A stretch of 6,442 nucleotides of DNA, taken from contig NW_003314706.1 of NCBI RefSeq assembly GCF_000143415.4, forward strand, positions 1 to 6,442, given 5' to 3'. This document shows positions 765-6,418 of this stretch, piece after piece (the stretch's first letter is position 1; each line of letters starts with the position of its first letter). The position numbers and the translations under genes are program-made. The notes under the pieces were generated by a model. The model did no database searches, was not told the origin of the DNA, and was given only the letters and a program-made list of their open reading frames with translations. Source of the DNA: Selaginella moellendorffii (Eukaryota; Plantae; Lycopodiophyta).

Positions 765-2060
765 ATGGAGGCGCGATATTCTTCTCTAAGGCTGGGAGAG
801 GCTCTTAACAGGAGGTACTAAGACTAGCACTAGCTTACATTCTCGATTTACTCCATCGATTTGCTTGTCTAGGTGCGACTATGCCCGAGCTTGCAAGGAG
901 CTTGCCGTGCTGCTCAAACAGGCTTATGGAATTGCCCCCAAGTCNNNNNNNNNNNNNNNNNNNNNNNNNNNNNNNNNNNNNNNNNNNNNNNNNNNNNNNN
1001 NNNNNNNNNNNNNNNNNNNNNNNNNNNNNNNNNNNNNNNNNNNNNNNNNNNNNNNNNNNNNNNNNNNNNNNNNNNNNNNNNNNNNNNNNNNNNNNNNNNN
1101 NNNNNNNNNNNNNNNNNNNNNNNNNNNNNNNNNNNNNNNNNNNNNNGAAGCACAAGAAGGGCTTGGCGGCTGGGGAGTTTAGAAAGGCTGCCATTTCCTT
1201 GCAAAGGAGCTCCAAGAATCAAAGCGAGCTAGACGGTATGGTTTTGTAAGACTGTTCTTCTTCGTCTTTCTGACTATGTTTTCTATTTTTTTCTCGTGAA
1301 GAATCCTGCCAGCTTCCGGTGGATGTTCTTGTTCACGTTTTCAGCTTCCTGGATCCCATATCACTGGCTACTGCTGGCTGCGTATGCAGGTTTTGATTTT
1401 AATCTCGATTTCTTCTCCAACAAATGTGACAGGTTTCATCTTGTTTTGTGAAGGTCTTGGAATTCAGAGTACAAAGACGCAAACCTCTGGCAGAAGCTTT
1501 TCACGGTTGTTCTTGAGAACACGAGTTTTGATCCTACTAGAGTTTTGCAGCTCGCTGGTTTTGAGCTGGGTGATGATGATTCCAGTACTCCTCTGAGAGT
1601 CAAGGATGTTTCGATCCAAAAAATAGGCTGCTGGAAGAAGGCTTTCGAGATCGCAGTTCTCCGTGAGTTGTTTCGTTTAGTGCTTTTCTTGTGTCTAACT
1701 ATTATATATTTTTGCTTTCCAGGTTCGCCAAAGCTTTTGTATCTCTTCACAAGGGCCCAGTGCTTGACTTGCAAGGCAACGTTTTGGTCATCGGAGCTTT
1801 GCTTGCAAACATTTGCCAACCAGTGCAGCAAGAAAAACTTCCAGGAGCACAAGCTGAGGCCACTGTTGCTAGAACAGGTTTGATCCGCCCTCGTCTGCCT
1901 TTTCATGGTTTTTCCTAAACTTTGTACTGCGGCACAGGTTGTCAGCTTTGTTCTCATGGGATCAAGACAAGCTTACAACACCAAAAAGGACAGTGATTCA
2001 GACGAAGACCAGTATCTTCCTTACGCGAAGTTGTGGGAGTATGCAAAGTGGTTGAGATAG
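765..2060 (+). CDS. F-box protein (At5g52880-like), spliced
   Basis: ATG at 765 in gccATGg context. Exons are 765-814, 873->944, (N gap), <1147-1235, 1302-1389, 1454-1662, 1723-1877 and 1938-2060 (TAG). Translation: MEARYSSLRLGEALNRRCDYARACKELAVLLKQAYGIAPK...KHKKGLAAGEFRKAAISLQRSSKNQSELDESCQ-LPVDVLVHVFSFLDPISLATAGCVCRSWNSEYKDANLWQ (F-box motif)...WKKAF...RAQCLTCKATFW...DSDSDEDQYLPYAKLWEYAKWLR*. The subfamily call is from recalled similarity. Confidence 0.9.
945..1146. other. N gap (202 nt) inside the F-box gene
   Basis: Run of N. The coding frame differs on the two sides, so the gap likely hides coding sequence plus an intron. Confidence 0.99.
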
Positions 2061-2283: not shown

Positions 2284-2899
2284 TTAGTTTTGAGATGTGG
2301 AGGTGGTGAAGTCGATGATCTCAATAAACTCTCCAGTGCAGTTGTAATGCTGGAGCGTCTTTGGTTTATGCGGTTGTCCACGATCTGCCCCACCAAGTTA
2401 CTTCCCTGTGGAACAAGCGCAAAAGAGTACGAGTTGTTCTGTTCACTGAATTGCAAAAACTTGTTGGTGGCTAGAGGAGACATCTAAGGCAAGACAACGT
2501 TGCCCTTCCCAGGTCCTGCAAAGACAAATCCATCACAATCAGAGAGTCCAATCCACCCAAAAACTCTTTTACAAAATCAAATGTGGTCAAGCTTGCTTAC
2601 CAAAGCTGCCTGCTGGAATGTTTGCAACCCAGTAGGTGATATAGGACTCAAAGAATTGGAATCCAATCATGTCCAACCAGGTGAACATCACCACTGAAAA
2701 GTATGAAGGATGTGTGATGTTGATGCCGCGGCGGTCGTCATATCCTTGGATGTCAATAGTGGGAGCCCTGTCAGTGATGTGCAAGGGGAGGAAGCTGTTC
2801 TCCTCGACTGTGGTGGAACCATACTTTTATGAGAAGATTAGCATTAGCTGACAACGAACACAAAGAGAGGAGAATCACAGCTGACAAGAACACTGCCAT
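2284..2899 (-). pseudogene. Disrupted gene for a secreted, divergent PEBP (phosphatidylethanolamine-binding protein)-like protein
   Basis: ATG at 2899 gives a signal-like MAVFLSAVILLSLCSLSANA-NLLIK. One extra base at 2824-2828 shifts the frame. The shifted frame reads YGSTTVEENSFLPLHITDRAPTIDIQG...YFSVVMF...YWVANIPAGSFG. A GTAAGC...TTGCAG intron spans 2600-2516. Then PGKGNVVLP*(TAG 2486-2484)MSP...NNSYSFALVPQ...DNRIN. A probable further shift near 2360 leads to KTLQHYNCTGEFIEIIDFTTSTSQN* (TAA 2286-2284). Motif order follows PEBP (Y-G..V, L....T..P.I.I.G, W-V-x-NIP, G.vv.Y..P, Y.F.L..Q). Confidence 0.7.
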
Positions 2900-3212
2900 T
2901 TCTTAGAAGAATTGACGAATCAATGGATTGATGCTTTTATCTATGACATTTTCTCGGGCCAGTTGACTAAATTCATCCATCCCTTGATCCAAATGATCCC
3001 AGATTTCTATAAAAATCTGGGTGTCAAGATTACCATGGTCAATTCAAGGTATACTAAATTCTACACCCCATGCGAGAATAAGTTGCTAAACCATGTAGCT
3101 CTACTTGAAAAAAATAAATTAAATTGAGCAGATTTCAATCTTCGGATAAGAGTTACATGCTGTCTACTAACGAAATATCTACATCCCCGATGAATAAAAA
3201 TATGAATTTTCT

Positions 3213-3581
3213 TTAGCAGCCACAAAGTATGGTTGGATCGCAGCAGCAGCAGCATTGATCAAGCAGGCAGCAGCAACAAAGCGCAGCCAAGCTGTAAGGA
3301 AAAACTCACCATGAGAAAACTCAGCAAAAATTACAAGCTATTAAGATAGAAACTACCACTCACCAGCCTCTGAGAAACCCCCCTGACCGCTTCTTTTGCT
3401 TGTAGTTTTGTGGCGGTGGATAGTAACCTGTGGAGAATAGAACTTAATTCAATCTAGAAGAACTAGAAGAGACCAAAGAGAGATTGATCCTTGGGGAGAG
3501 CTTACCTTGCTGGGGATAGCCATAGACTGGCTGCTGATGGTGGTGTCCATGCCCCTTTTCCTCATGGTGGTGTTTCGCCAT
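3213..3581 (-). CDS. CYSTM-family cysteine-rich tail-anchored small protein (72 aa) with His-rich N-terminus
   Basis: Exons 3581-3506, 3427-3364 and 3291-3213 total 219 nt. Introns are 3505-3428 (GTAAGC..CCACAG) and 3363-3292 (GTGAGT..TTACAG). Protein: MAKHHHEEKGHGHHHQQPVYGYPQQGYYPPPQNYKQKKRSGGFLRGCLAALCCCCLLDQCCCCCDPTILCGC*. GYPQQGY-PPP and GFLxGCLAALCCCCLLD are CYSTM signatures. Confidence 0.95.
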
Positions 3582-3714
3582 TTTGAAGAACAAGGAAGAA
3601 TCGCCCAAATTCGCAAGAGACCAGAAACTAGATCGAAAAATTCAGCTTCCAATCGAAGAGAAAACCCAAAAGAATGAAACGAATCGATCGAATTCGGAGG
3701 GGACGATCGTCGCC

Positions 3715-3735: not shown

Positions 3736-3805
3736 CCGCGTAAATTCAAGTAAAGTCGGTCGCCACGTGTCAACGCGTGTCAATATGCCACGTGTCATTA
3801 CGCGG
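3736..3805. promoter_or_regulatory. ABRE/G-box x2, CE3-like element, DRE/CRT core and CGCG boxes upstream of CYSTM
   Basis: GCCACGTGTCA at 3762-3772 and 3787-3797; ACGCGTGTC at 3773-3781; GTCGGT (ACCGAC on minus) at 3755-3760; CCGCGTAA at 3736-3743 and its reverse complement TTACGCGG at 3798-3805. Confidence 0.8.
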
Positions 3806-4319
3806 ATTTAGGGCCTAGGGCTTGCTTCAAGGAAAGGGGAAACGAGGAGAGAGGGGATCTGTCACAGTGCAGGAAGGATTTTCAAGAAGCCTGTTGACAT
3901 TTCTTTTGGTTCTTTTGTTAAAGTATTTACATAGATTGGTTGAAAAAAAATGTTAATGCAATGTGGATAGTCTTTATGATCAAATTTTGAATATTAAGCA
4001 ATAGCTTAAGGATGCCATAAGCATAATGCAGAGTGTCAGAATGGCATCCATCAAGGAGAGGTAAAAAGACTTAACAAGTCTTAACAGAGAATAGTCCACA
4101 CACGTTTGCTGTGGCATCCGAGGCTCGATCCATGCAGTTTTCTTTTTGGGAATGTTGATAAGGGTGTGGGCTATGGTACTCCTTTTGGCAGTTCGTCAGC
4201 ATGTTTACAAGGTCCAGTGTTTTCCACGTATGATTTATCTTTTTGTAGATCGATCACACGAGGGATGCAAGAAATTCAAGAAATGCGCGTGAATCCAGGT
4301 AGATTAGGGTTCTATGATC

Positions 4320-6418
4320 CTAGGGTAGTTTTGGCGCTCTCCACTCGCAGATCGCCGACCTCACGACGCGATTCGGTGTCAAGTTCTTGTTCTCCAGCCG
4401 CAAGTTCGTCATCGGCGACGCATCGCTCTTCTGGAGCCAGCGAATGATCGCGTCATACTCGTACGTGTATCCGTCCGACGCGATCACAGGGTATTCCATC
4501 ACCTCCTGGAAGACGAAGAAATATTTCAAGAGGATGGAGGAATTCCAGGATGATTACCTGGAGAATCGGGCACAGGAAGAGCGTTGGAGCCGCGGATTTC
4601 GGTCGCTCCTCGCTGCGAAACAGATGATTCATCGTCTCGAGCATCTGCAACACGTTTTCCAGCTCCGGCCTGTTCTTCCTCTGGCACTCGGCGCAGTTTA
4701 GACCAATGCAAGCCAGCTGCGTCGCGGCTGCCAGCGGCCACTCTCCAGCGCTAGTGTCGAGGATCNNNNNNNNNNNNNNNNNNNNNNNNNNNNNNNNNNN
4801 NNNNNNNNNNNNNNNNNNNNNNNNNNNNNNNNNNNNNNNNNNNNNNNNNNNNNNNNNNNNNNNNNNNNNNNNNNNNNNNNNNNNNNNNNNNNNNNNNNNN
4901 NNNNNNNNNNNNNNNNNNNNNNNNNNNNNTCCCACAGGTGATGTGCTCCTCACGCTTGTCGCGTCGCCTGGCATGAATCTTGCCAACCCAACGTCGCTGA
5001 TCTTACTGTTGTAGTTTTTGTCTAGCAGGATGTTGGAAGGCTTGAGGTCCCGGAGCACGATCGGCTGTGGCTTTGCCTTGTGGAGGAAGAGGAGCGCTGT
5101 GCCGACTTCCACCGCAATCTGGTACCTCGTGAGGCATGAGATTGGCGGCGAGTCGTCCTTGCAGAACAGTCGATCTTCCAAGCTCCCGTTTTCCAGGTAC
5201 TCGTAGACAAGGCATTTCTTTTCCGGATTTCCGCCTAGCAGTAGAACGATGTGAGGATGGTGTAGTCGGCTCAGCACTTCCACCTTTATTTTCCCATGCT
5301 TGTTAGAGATTTTAGAAATTCGAGTGAGTTTACGTACCTCTTGTTCGAACTCTTGTGGTCCTTGCCAACTATCATGTCTTAGAACCTTGACTGCTACGTT
5401 GGTCCTGTGGAGAGTGCCTTTGTAGACGTGACCGTATGATCCCTCTCCTATTTTGTTGTTCTCAGAAAAGTTGTCTGTGATGTCTCGGAGTTCCTCAAAC
5501 GTGAATTGTGTGTACTTGAGCAGTTGTTGCCTGTTGGCCTCTCTCTCAGCTTCTGCTTTACATTGGAGCTCTATCCTGTTTTCCATTTCCTTCCTTCTCC
5601 GGATTTCGTCCACCAGTGCTTTTTTCATCGAGTTGACAAGCGTGAGAGCTTCAGCACGCTTCTGCGATTCCTCATCTAATTTCTTTGCTGCGTTATACTC
5701 TCGCTGATTGTCCTCCTCGACCGCTCGCATCAATATTTCCGCCTGGAATGCCATGAAATCGTAAGACTTTTGACGATAGCATCTCCAGTTTACCCGTTTT
5801 AAAGCCCAATCAGCGTTCTCGCGAGCTTCCTGGCTCCGTAGTGTTTCAGCGTCGGCAGATTCTTTTGCTTTGTTTGCAGCCACGATGGCATTTTGTAACT
5901 GCTGCTTGAGCATGTTTATTTGCTCCAGATCTCCAGCCTGCACGAGAGAGTCAGAACAAAATGCTGTTCTTGTAAATCTAACCTTGGGATCCGCAGGCAG
6001 GGGCTCGCTGATGATACTACTGGGCGAAGACTCTGCGAATTCTTCTTCAGTGCGAAAGGCTGGTGGCACAACTTTTAGTTCCGGCGTTTGAGGTTGGTAG
6101 CTTCCTTCAGCGATCTCATCCTTACTGTCACTGCTTCGCATTGATAGGTGACTTTTCAGCGGAGAGGTCGATACCATGAGAATTTCGCGATTCAAAGCGT
6201 CAGCTTCCAGCCAGCTAGAGGATGGAGACGGAGATAAGGGGAAAATGAATTTGTCCGCCACACTCGGACGAGCAGGAGATGAATTTGTACGAGGGAATGA
6301 GTGCGGTGGTGAAGCATTCCTGAATGACGCCAATTTCGAGGATTTCGATATGCACTGCACAGTACAGTAATCTGGAGCATGTTTCCGAACGTAGTCTGAA
6401 ACTCCCGACCTCAATCTC
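4320..6418 (-). CDS. Plant U-box domain-containing protein kinase (USP-like N-terminal domain end, coiled coil, Ser/Thr kinase, U-box; RLCK-IXb type); 5' end outside the window
   Basis: Acceptor at 6420-6419. Predicted exons are 6418-5983, 5937-5794, 5742-5338, 5283-4558 (spanning the N gap) and 4505-4320. Motifs: VRKHAPDYCTVQCISK (end of USP-like domain); E/K/A-rich coiled coil; IGEGSYGHVYKG, VAVK, LRDLKPSNILLD and DVGLAR (kinase); FLCPILQ-EVMEYPVIASDGYTYEYDAIIRWLQKSDASPMTNLRLENKNLTPNRVVRSAICEW (U-box). TAG at 4322-4320. Confidence 0.95.
4766..4929. other. N gap (164 nt) inside the kinase domain
   Basis: Run of N. The frame is conserved across it (55 codons), matching the missing kinase subdomains VIII-X. 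Confidence 0.99.

What the first reader, a model, noticed from the sequence alone, without database searches (positions are those of the whole stretch)
2284..2899. Hidden secreted PEBP-like protein lacking the canonical ligand-pocket motifs
Seen: stitching ORF fragments across one intron and the lesions gives a protein of about 170 aa. It has a hydrophobic N-terminus ending A-N-A, N-glycosylation sequons (NIT, NNS, NCT) and PEBP-like motif order. The DPDxP, HW and GxHR motifs are replaced by TWLDMIG, YW and QNNS. Known: plant PEBPs (FT/TFL1/MFT) are intracellular, lack signal peptides and keep these motifs, and typically have three introns. Inference: this locus belongs to a divergent extracellular PEBP-fold family, possibly lineage-specific and undescribed. 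It may have a different activity, for example protease inhibition or defence, since some non-plant PEBPs inhibit proteases.
Basis: partly seen in the sequence, partly recalled or inferred. Interest (0 to 1): 0.8.

Follow-up and report, generated by a model that had tools for sequence, protein, structure and literature searches.

The report
Decayed copy of secreted PEBP-like gene
This spikemoss (Selaginella moellendorffii) locus is a broken copy of a small gene family that descends from the florigen/PEBP proteins, carries an export-type leader and has lost the PEBP pocket motifs; no paper found here describes the family, but this copy cannot make the protein.

Summary
On the minus strand, 2899-2284, lies a two-exon gene with an 85-nt GT..AG intron (2600-2516). 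It has a signal-peptide-like leader and NIT/NNS/NCT sequons. FTWLD, YW and NNS stand where PEBPs have DPDxP, HW and GxHR.

The window is a 6442-bp S. moellendorffii scaffold, the alternative haplotype of GL377624.1.

This copy is broken three times: an extra A (2828-2825), a TAG (2486-2484) and a 10-bp deletion (~2364). Its allele (L002) and its only close paralog (L001) carry different disabling lesions. Independent runs confirm the extra A and the deletion. The TAG is polymorphic.

Intact two-exon relatives exist in the same genome (SELMODRAFT_412274, 406885 and others, 174-177 aa, about 40% identical). They share the intron site and phase.

The PEBP link is real but remote. Pfam PBP finds nothing. 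A family profile hits Hd3a (E=2.2e-4), FT and TFL1 as its best solved structures, and all 30 language-model neighbours of an intact paralog carry PF01161. Structure models were low-confidence.

No relative outside S. moellendorffii was found. PEBP surveys list only MFT-like genes in lycophytes.

The scan has already noted this family on other pieces of this genome. Here it is a pseudogene.

The parts
2284..2899 (-). Whole PEBP-like pseudogene, from ATG (2899) to TAA (2286-2284); subfamily B of the Selaginella leader-bearing PEBP-like family
   Evidence: Three-frame translation. Alignment with allele L002 and paralog L001. Profile match to intact P0004, E=2.5e-17.
2840..2899 (-). Signal-peptide-like leader, 20 codons ending A-N-A; the mature end would start at NLLIKYGSTTV
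   Evidence: Hydropathy 2.8 over 12 residues, no charged residue. Intact paralogs have equivalent leaders that end just before LL(I/V)QYGSTTV.
2825..2828 (-). AAAA run with one A too many: a +1 frameshift that separates the leader from the body
   Evidence: L001 and L002 have AAA here. In L002 the leader end and KYSSTTVEENSFLPL lie in one frame. The X4 contig over 2547-2930 has no gap against the window.
2601..2824 (-). Body of exon 1 (frame of KYGSTTV...IPAGSF-G). Contains sequon NIT (2721-2713), FTWLD in place of DPDxP (2685-2671) and YW in place of HW (2634-2629)
   Evidence: Register against Hd3a/FT.
2516..2600 (-). Only intron: 85 nt, GT..AG, phase 1 inside a Gly codon
   Evidence: Sequence. 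Spliced contig in X7 joins 2514|2600. Same site and phase in the intact paralogs on L003 and L004.
2484..2486 (-). In-frame TAG where relatives have Tyr (TAC); polymorphic
   Evidence: In reads, + strand C>G at 2484 in the X4 contig and the spliced X7 contig; unchanged in X1 and in one X7 contig.
2355..2366 (-). Site of a 10-bp deletion relative to L001 (near 2364/2363, placement ambiguous by a few bases): frameshift before the C-terminal segment
   Evidence: The X4 contig over 2300-2568 has no gaps against the window.
2287..2515 (-). Exon 2, read in two frames because of the deletion. Contains sequon NNS at the GxHR-equivalent place (2438-2430), NCT (2343-2335) and the single conserved Cys

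Best explanation
The locus is a pseudogene.

What it is: a decaying member ('subfamily B') of a Selaginella moellendorffii gene family that derives from a eukaryotic, plant-type PEBP. In this family the first ~25 residues of a PEBP are replaced by a cleavable-looking signal peptide. Only one intron remains; its phase 1 and its approximate position fit the third intron of plant PEBP genes. The anion-pocket signatures are gone. N-glycosylation sequons are conserved, one of them exactly at the GxHR place.

Shown:
- Homology of the window copy to the intact paralogs.
- The three lesions in the window copy.
- Different lesions in the allele (a 1-bp deletion in the leader, a 1-bp insertion, a 12-bp in-frame deletion) and in the paralog L001 (an 11-bp and a 5-bp deletion).
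- Confirmation of two window lesions in an independent run, and polymorphism of the TAG.
- A spliced low-level RNA-type contig of the non-TAG allele.

Inferred:
- The ancestral protein entered the secretory pathway and was glycosylated.
- Subfamily B was under purifying selection after it duplicated. Exons are 90% identical between the window and L001, the intron only 71%; dN/dS is 0.4-0.6.
- Subfamily B has since been released from constraint, so the copies are dying independently.
- The weak RNA over the locus may be read-through from the strongly expressed CYSTM-like gene just upstream. A contig of depth ~240 ends at 2875, inside the pseudogene's first 25 bases.

Consequence: no working protein can be made from this copy. 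From the ATG it yields only a 42-residue out-of-frame peptide.
For: - Identity of the window: P0003 = SELMODRAFT_449397 sits on a 6442-bp contig.
- Haplotype relation to GL377624.1: same neighbours (histone deacetylase, F-box, U-box kinase). Flanking genes are 98-99% identical; the locus is 96.4-97.4% identical with many indels.
- Lesions. Read support.
- Family: the exhaustive HMMER search found 5 representatives, all S. moellendorffii, with P0004 aligned over profile positions 1-146 = residues 29-175. Further members.
- Shared intron site and phase.
- PEBP relation. Profile A5 against the PDB: Hd3a E=2.2e-4, FT 0.012 and 0.02. A6: 8.5e-4. The profile of intact members alone (A9): Hd3a 0.0025, FT, TFL1, with a colinear second segment HTYDFVLVPQ...GSPLETVSF against HRLVFVLFQQ...GSPVAAVYF.
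- Atlas features: 30/30 hits carry PF01161, top score 0.91, 198 shared features.
- UniRef name 'PEBP-like protein' for intact paralogs.
- MAFFT aligns the family colinearly with bacterial YbhB-type PEBPs.
- A model built on that alignment gives only PEBP folds in Foldseek, with plant CEN/TFL1/FT/Hd3a first (TM 0.5-0.62).
- Conserved sequons and the single conserved Cys.
Against: - The Pfam PBP model does not match any member, even at E<=10.
- The profile of subfamily B alone finds no PEBP in the PDB.
- hhalign against 82 bacterial PEBPs is in the right register but not significant (P=0.08).
- Both AlphaFold models are low-confidence (pLDDT 37.7 and 48.0). The second used an alignment that already contained PEBPs, so its Foldseek result is not independent.
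- A spliced RNA-type contig exists, so the locus is not silent.
- dN/dS of 0.4-0.6 is not fully neutral.
- Allele and window share no disabling lesion, so the first cause of the loss of function is not identified.
- Unannotated intact B-type copies elsewhere in the genome could not be searched for.
Confidence: 0.8

Rival explanations
1. The gene is intact in the plant, and the frameshifts and the stop are assembly or sequencing errors of a small leftover scaffold.
For: - The window is a 6.4-kb scaffold with two N gaps.
- The TAG is absent from contigs of runs X4 and X7.
Against: - The X4 contigs (another study) cover 2547-2930 and 2300-2568 without any gap against the window. So the extra A and the 10-bp deletion recur.
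- X1 and one X7 contig carry the TAG.
- The allele and the paralog have their own, different lesions.
Confidence: 0.05
2. The PEBP likeness is chance or convergence. The family is an unrelated lineage-specific secreted beta-rich protein.
For: - No Pfam PBP hit.
- All signature motifs are absent.
- The alignment-only AlphaFold model is uninformative.
- The subfamily-B profile alone hits no PEBP.
- hhalign against bacterial PEBPs gives P=0.08.
Against: - Of 177,635 PDB sequences, the top three or four hits of three family profiles are plant PEBPs, always in the same register.
- 30/30 feature neighbours carry PF01161.
- A database source independently names the paralogs 'PEBP-like protein'.
- The family is colinear with PEBPs over its full length.
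- The intron phase is that of PEBP intron 3.
Confidence: 0.07
3. The locus is still used: as a transcribed pseudogene, as a source of the short leader-plus-22-residue peptide read from the ATG, or through recoding across the frameshifts.
For: - A spliced contig and low coverage over the locus in RNA-type runs.
- The out-of-frame peptide after the leader is similar in the window and in L001.
Against: - That similarity follows from 90% DNA identity.
- The allele L002 stops after 23 codons in another frame.
- The lesions differ between alleles, which does not fit programmed recoding.
- The coverage is about 50 times lower than that of the upstream gene whose transcript runs into the locus.
Confidence: 0.05
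4. The hydrophobic N-terminus of the family is not a cleaved export signal. It could be a membrane anchor or an organelle signal, so the family would not be extracellular.
For: - No predictor was run.
- The leader has no positively charged n-region.
Against: - The hydrophobic core is only 12-14 residues and is followed by small residues at -3/-1 (A-N-A; T-V-G; A-M-G). The following first strand is conserved.
- Sequons are conserved in both subfamilies.
- There is no C-terminal hydrophobic tail or retention motif.
Confidence: 0.15

Closest known systems
Plant PEBPs (FT/Hd3a, TFL1/CEN, MFT; Pfam PF01161)
   Same: - They are the best solved-structure matches of the family profile: Hd3a E=2.2e-4, then FT and TFL1.
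- The order of segments is colinear: L.V.YG..V.NG, P.I.I.G, Y/FS.VM, Y..W....IPA, P.Y..P, H..Y.F.L..Q, GSP...V.F.
- The single intron is in phase 1. PEBP intron 3 must also be phase 1, given exons of 62 and 41 bp after a first exon whose reported lengths (192-216 bp) are multiples of three (PMC10156061 and PMC6514984). It lies right after ...SFG, as in Hd3a ...ASFG|QEV. The exact FT position is from memory and was not tested.
   Different: - It has an export-type leader instead of the ~25-residue PEBP N-terminus.
- DPDxP is replaced by FTWLD (window) or ADQRA (intact paralogs).
- HW is replaced by YW.
- GxHR is replaced by QNNS (window) or RNHT (paralogs). Both create an N-x-S/T sequon.
- It has two exons instead of four.
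- There is no Pfam PBP hit.
- Identity to PEBPs is about 20%.
S. moellendorffii 'PEBP-like protein' paralogs SELMODRAFT_412274, 406885, 422282, 445941 (UniRef names; 174-177 aa)
   Same: - Same family (E=2.5e-17).
- Same leader position.
- Same intron site and phase.
- Same conserved sequon at the GxHR place and the same single Cys.
   Different: - These are intact open reading frames that keep the His of GxHR. The window copy is about 40% identical and broken.
- Together with its allele and L001, the window copy forms a separate subfamily in which no intact copy was found.
PEBPs with leaders in other organisms: periplasmic E. coli YbcL (1fux); human PEBP4 and nematode secreted PEBPs (from memory)
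   Same: A PEBP-fold domain behind an N-terminal export signal. YbcL is annotated as periplasmic and appears among the fold matches.
   Different: - Those proteins keep the DPDxP and GxHR pocket motifs (YbhB/YbcL).
- They are more distant from this family than plant PEBPs are (ranks 47-50; hhalign P=0.08).
- They arose independently.
Yeast Tfs1p, carboxypeptidase Y inhibitor (1wpx)
   Same: It appears among the fold matches at rank 41. An Atlas neighbour cluster is named 'Carboxypeptidase Y inhibitor'.
   Different: It is cytosolic and keeps PBP signatures. Nothing here tests inhibition.

Membership tests
PEBP / PBP (Pfam PF01161) | Match to the Pfam PBP profile above its cut-off | tested here: not met
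   No PBP hit at E<=10 for the window pieces, for P0001 or for the intact paralogs P0004-P0008.
PEBP / PBP (Pfam PF01161) | DPDxP motif | tested here: not met
   In the register, the window has FTWLD (2685-2671). The intact paralogs have ADQRA; only the first Asp is kept there.
PEBP / PBP (Pfam PF01161) | GxHR motif and the His of HW (pocket residues) | tested here: not met
   The window has QNNS and YW. The intact paralogs have RNHT (His kept, Arg lost) and YW.
PEBP-like superfamily (fold level) | Significant remote homology to, or the fold of, solved PEBPs | tested here: inconclusive
   - Sequence profiles: Hd3a E=2.2e-4, 8.5e-4 and 2.5e-3, with FT and TFL1 next.
- Atlas features: 30/30 hits carry PF01161.
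- Structure: the family-only model has pLDDT 37.7 and gives meaningless matches. The model built with bacterial PEBPs in the alignment has pLDDT 48; all its top hits are PEBPs (TM 0.5-0.62), but that test is circular.
Plant EuPEBP genes (FT/TFL1/MFT) | Four exons with a 62-bp exon 2 and a 41-bp exon 3 | tested here: not met
   The window, L001, L002, L003 and L004 have two exons. The one intron has the phase (1) and about the position of PEBP intron 3. Exon sizes are from PMC6514984 and PMC10156061.
Plant EuPEBP genes (FT/TFL1/MFT) | Cytosolic protein without a signal peptide | tested here: not met
   A hydrophobic leader is present in all full-length members. No predictor was run.
Processed or unprocessed pseudogene | Frame-breaking lesions relative to intact relatives that are real in the DNA | tested here: met
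   An extra A, a TAG and a 10-bp deletion. The extra A and the deletion recur in contigs of run X4. The intron is retained, so this is an unprocessed pseudogene.
Processed or unprocessed pseudogene | Neutral evolution or loss of constraint | tested here: inconclusive
   - dN/dS is 0.42-0.57 among the three copies.
- Between haplotypes the locus diverges more and has more indels than the flanking genes: 96.4-97.4% against 98-99%.
- Exons are better kept than the intron between paralogs: 90% against 71%.
Secretory-pathway glycoprotein | Cleavable signal peptide and used N-glycosylation sites | not testable with these tools
   There is only indirect evidence: the hydropathy of the leader, small residues at -3/-1, and sequons conserved across subfamilies at alignment columns 36-40 and 110.

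The most novel reading that the evidence does not exclude
Lycophytes, or at least Selaginella, may hold a second PEBP lineage that has not been recognised. It would have been split off from a plant-type (MFT-like) PEBP by gain of a signal peptide, loss of two introns and dismantling of the anion pocket, with a glycan site placed where GxHR was. It would work outside the cell in a new role, for example as a protease inhibitor or as a ligand or lipid carrier next to the nsLTP genes it neighbours. This window would then catch one branch of that lineage in the act of dying, with a still-segregating nonsense allele.
Probability: 0.5. Interest if true: 0.6.

Novelty: new variant of a known kind. Interest (0 to 1): 0.45.

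Why it matters
Plant PEBPs (florigen FT, TFL1, MFT) are textbook intracellular or phloem-mobile regulators. Surveys state that lycophytes have only MFT-like PEBPs (PMC8408984).

A leader-bearing, glycosylation-site-bearing, pocket-less offshoot would show that the PEBP fold was recruited for an extracellular task in an early vascular plant lineage. The intact paralogs give testable proteins.

This locus adds three things:
- The birth-and-death side of that family: three copies with independent lesions and a polymorphic stop.
- A correction of two chimeric gene models, SELMODRAFT_449397 and 445672.
- A shared intron site and phase that tie the family to plant PEBP genes.

By itself the locus is a dead gene of modest interest.

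Tried and rejected
- **Pfam on the four window pieces, on P0001 and on five paralogs.** No PBP hit; only noise such as TetR_C_46 at E=0.028.
- **phmmer of single pieces against the PDB.** Nothing, or chance. A cubilin CUB match to HYNCTGDFIEIID (E=0.17) was rejected as a short chance motif.
- **Subfamily-B profile against the PDB.** It matched only His-tag/thrombin-site artefacts through LVPQGS.
- **Atlas features with P0001.** Uninformative, scores below 0.9.
- **AlphaFold with the 12-row family alignment.** pLDDT 37.7; the Foldseek hits were meaningless.
- **hhalign against 82 bacterial YbhB-type PEBPs.** Right register, but P=0.08.
- **Metagenome scan with family patterns.** 83 pattern matches, none a relative. 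A first attempt with A6 had no block conserved enough to search with.
- **A 17-nt GT..AG 'mini-intron' at 2824-2808 as an explanation of the first frame change.** Rejected: it is too short, and L002 reads leader end and body in one frame with one A fewer.
- **Programmed frameshifting or editing.** Rejected because the lesions differ between the alleles.
- **Papers on the locus tags.** None found.
- **Left out on purpose.** The joined (spliced, read-through) model of the window copy was not handed to any search or fold tool. Exons and inter-lesion pieces were searched by reference, and the annotators' own models P0001-P0003 were used where a spliced sequence was needed. A joined frame was used only inside a local script to count codon changes.

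Full report
**What is there**

The minus strand between 2899 and 2284 carries a small two-exon gene.
- The ATG is at 2899. A 20-codon hydrophobic leader ending A-N-A follows (2899-2840).
- The reading frame then changes at an AAAA run (2828-2825).
- The body of exon 1 (KYGSTTVEENSFLPLHITDRAPTIDIQG ... IPAGSF) runs to 2601.
- An 85-nt GT..AG intron (2600-2516) splits a Gly codon in phase 1.
- Exon 2 (2515-2287) contains an in-frame TAG (2486-2484) and a second frame change near 2364. It ends ...YNCTGEFIEIIDFTTSTSQN, with TAA at 2286-2284.

**Origin of the window**

The word search returned three S. moellendorffii gene models.
- SELMODRAFT_449397 (P0003) lies on a contig of exactly 6442 bp, so it is this window.
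- SELMODRAFT_445672 (P0002) lies on GL377624.1 (locus L002).
- SELMODRAFT_427643 (P0001) lies on GL377658.1 (locus L001).

L002 has the same neighbours as the window: histone deacetylase, F-box gene and U-box kinase. It is 98-99% identical in those genes. It is therefore the other haplotype. L001 has different neighbours and is a paralog.

Homology between L001 and the window starts about 7 bp before the ATG and ends just after the stop. The intron aligns worse than the exons (71% against 90%).

**All three copies are broken, each differently**
- Window: one extra A, a TAG where the others have TAC (Tyr), and a 10-bp deletion.
- L002: a 1-bp deletion in the leader, a 1-bp C insertion before LHITD, and a 12-bp in-frame deletion. 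Its exon 2 is open.
- L001: an 11-bp deletion at the end of the leader and a 5-bp deletion in exon 1.
- In L002 the leader end and KYSSTTVEENSFLPL are in one frame. This fixes the ancestral reading and rules out a tiny intron as the cause of the first frame change.

**Read evidence**
- Contigs of run X4, from another study, cover 2547-2930 and 2300-2568 without gaps against the window. So the extra A and the 10-bp deletion are real.
- X4 and a spliced X7 contig have TAC at 2486-2484. X1 and another X7 contig have TAG. The stop is therefore polymorphic.
- The X7 contig joins 2514|2600, so the intron is removed in RNA.
- Coverage over the locus is about 5. A contig of depth ~240 that comes from the upstream gene ends at 2875, inside the pseudogene's start. 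Read-through is a plausible source of the weak RNA.

**Selection**
- dN/dS among the copies is 0.42-0.57.
- Between haplotypes the locus is more diverged and richer in indels than the flanking genes.

**Gene models**

The annotated models P0002 and P0003 fuse the upstream His/Cys-rich gene to pieces of this locus. They are chimeras.

**Relatives**

An exhaustive HMMER search with a 150-position profile of the three copies (A4; built from exon pieces by reference plus the annotators' models) found only five representatives among 1.84 billion proteins. All are from S. moellendorffii.

Two were new:
- P0004 (SELMODRAFT_412274, 177 aa) matches over profile positions 1-146 = residues 29-175, at E=2.5e-17.
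- P0005.

Cluster look-up and a second word search added SELMODRAFT_406885, 422282, 445941, 413648 and 413642. The full-length ones have a leader ending just before LL(I/V)QYGSTTV. They are intact and about 40% identical to the window copy. They have one intron at the same codon and phase.

Features conserved across both subfamilies:
- a sequon at the place of GxHR (NHT or NNS);
- a second sequon near column 36-40;
- a single Cys.

A pattern scan of JGI metagenomes found no relative.

**Is it PEBP-like?**

The Pfam PBP model says nothing for any member. The signature motifs are absent.

Profiles searched against all PDB sequences tell a different story:

| Profile | Hd3a | FT | TFL1 |
|---|---|---|---|
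| A5 (whole family, with leaders) | 2.2e-4 | 0.012, 0.02 | - |
| A6 (mature parts) | 8.5e-4 | 0.027, 0.044 | - |
| A9 (intact paralogs only) | 2.5e-3 | 0.048, 0.079 | 0.76 |

- In each search the top three or four hits are plant PEBPs, always in the same register.
- A9 also gives a colinear C-terminal segment, HTYDFVLVPQ...YHCGSPLETVSF against HRLVFVLFQQ...YNLGSPVAAVYF.
- The profile of subfamily B alone is too narrow to reach PEBPs.
- For P0004, all 30 Atlas feature neighbours carry PF01161 (top score 0.91, 198 shared features).
- UniRef names these paralogs 'PEBP-like protein'.
- hhalign against 82 bacterial YbhB-type PEBPs (loci) gives the expected register but P=0.08.
- MAFFT aligns the two groups colinearly.

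**Structure**
- AlphaFold with the family alone failed (pLDDT 37.7). Its fold matches are noise.
- A second model was built with twelve bacterial PEBPs added to the alignment. It is still weak (pLDDT 48, pTM 0.48).
- The 50 Foldseek matches listed for the second model are all PEBP folds. Plant CEN, TFL1, FT and Hd3a come first (TM 0.5-0.62). The bacterial type that was in the alignment comes last.
- That second test is circular as to the fold. It does suggest that the family is nearer to eukaryotic, plant-type PEBPs than to bacterial ones.

**Gene structure**
- Plant PEBP genes have four exons, with exons 2 and 3 of 62 and 41 bp (PMC6514984, PMC10156061).
- The reported first-exon lengths (192-216 bp) are multiples of three. 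This makes intron 3 phase 1, the phase of the only intron here.
- The intron here follows ...SFG, as does the exon 3 end I recall for FT/Hd3a. The exact FT codon is from memory and was not tested.

**Comparison with what is known**
- The closest known proteins are plant PEBPs. The family fails every motif-level and profile-level membership test of PF01161. It fits only at superfamily level.
- PEBPs with leaders exist elsewhere (periplasmic YbcL; human PEBP4, from memory). Those keep the pocket.
- A broad survey finds only MFT-like EuPEBPs in lycophytes (PMC8408984).
- No paper mentions the locus tags.
- Earlier notes of this scan describe the same family on other pieces of this genome, with intact tandem copies, LTP neighbours and clubmoss relatives. 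They agree with what I found independently before reading them. I did not test their claims about clubmoss relatives or intronless copies. I did see the LTP link: an LTP_2 gene lies upstream of P0004, and the model P0010 carries an LTP-like N-terminal part.

**Verdict**

The locus is an unprocessed pseudogene of a Selaginella leader-bearing, pocket-less PEBP-like family. Its whole subfamily (three loci) is decaying by independent lesions.

The function of the intact relatives is unknown. My best guess is an extracellular binding or inhibitor role, and that is inference only.

Noticed in passing
window 3213-3592 (minus strand; exons about 3592-3507, 3430-3365, 3300-3213): A small gene directly upstream of the pseudogene. 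It has a His-rich, PQQGY-rich N-terminus and a C-terminal Cys-rich tail (LAALCCCCLLDQCCCCC...). It looks like a CYSTM stress protein, with a weak partial Pfam hit (E=0.18). It seems strongly expressed: a contig of depth ~240 runs to 2875.
   Followed up: partly
window 3760-3800: Two copies of CCACGTGTCA (ACGT-core, ABRE-like boxes) lie about 170-200 bp upstream of the CYSTM-like gene's ATG. This fits an ABA- or stress-responsive promoter.
   Followed up: no
window 2284-3592; P0002, P0003: The annotated models SELMODRAFT_449397 and SELMODRAFT_445672 are chimeras. They join exons of the CYSTM-like gene, partly in a wrong frame, to fragments of the PEBP-like pseudogene.
   Followed up: yes
window 945-1146 and 4766-4929: Two runs of N (assembly gaps). 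One lies inside the F-box gene region and one inside the U-box kinase gene.
   Followed up: no
window 3947-4146: An intergenic stretch that is only 82% identical to the other haplotype, with 50 gap columns. This is far more diverged than the rest of the window (96-100%).
   Followed up: no
L003:1-674; P0010 residues 1-100: nsLTP-like genes sit next to intact family members. One model (SELMODRAFT_413648) fuses an 8-Cys LTP-like part to a PEBP-like part that lacks its own leader. This may be a real fusion or an annotation artefact.
   Followed up: no
run X7: A run filed under a different organism label (coded B) holds contigs identical to the window allele and contigs of the other allele. The label may be a synonym, a mislabel or a mixed sample.
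   Followed up: no
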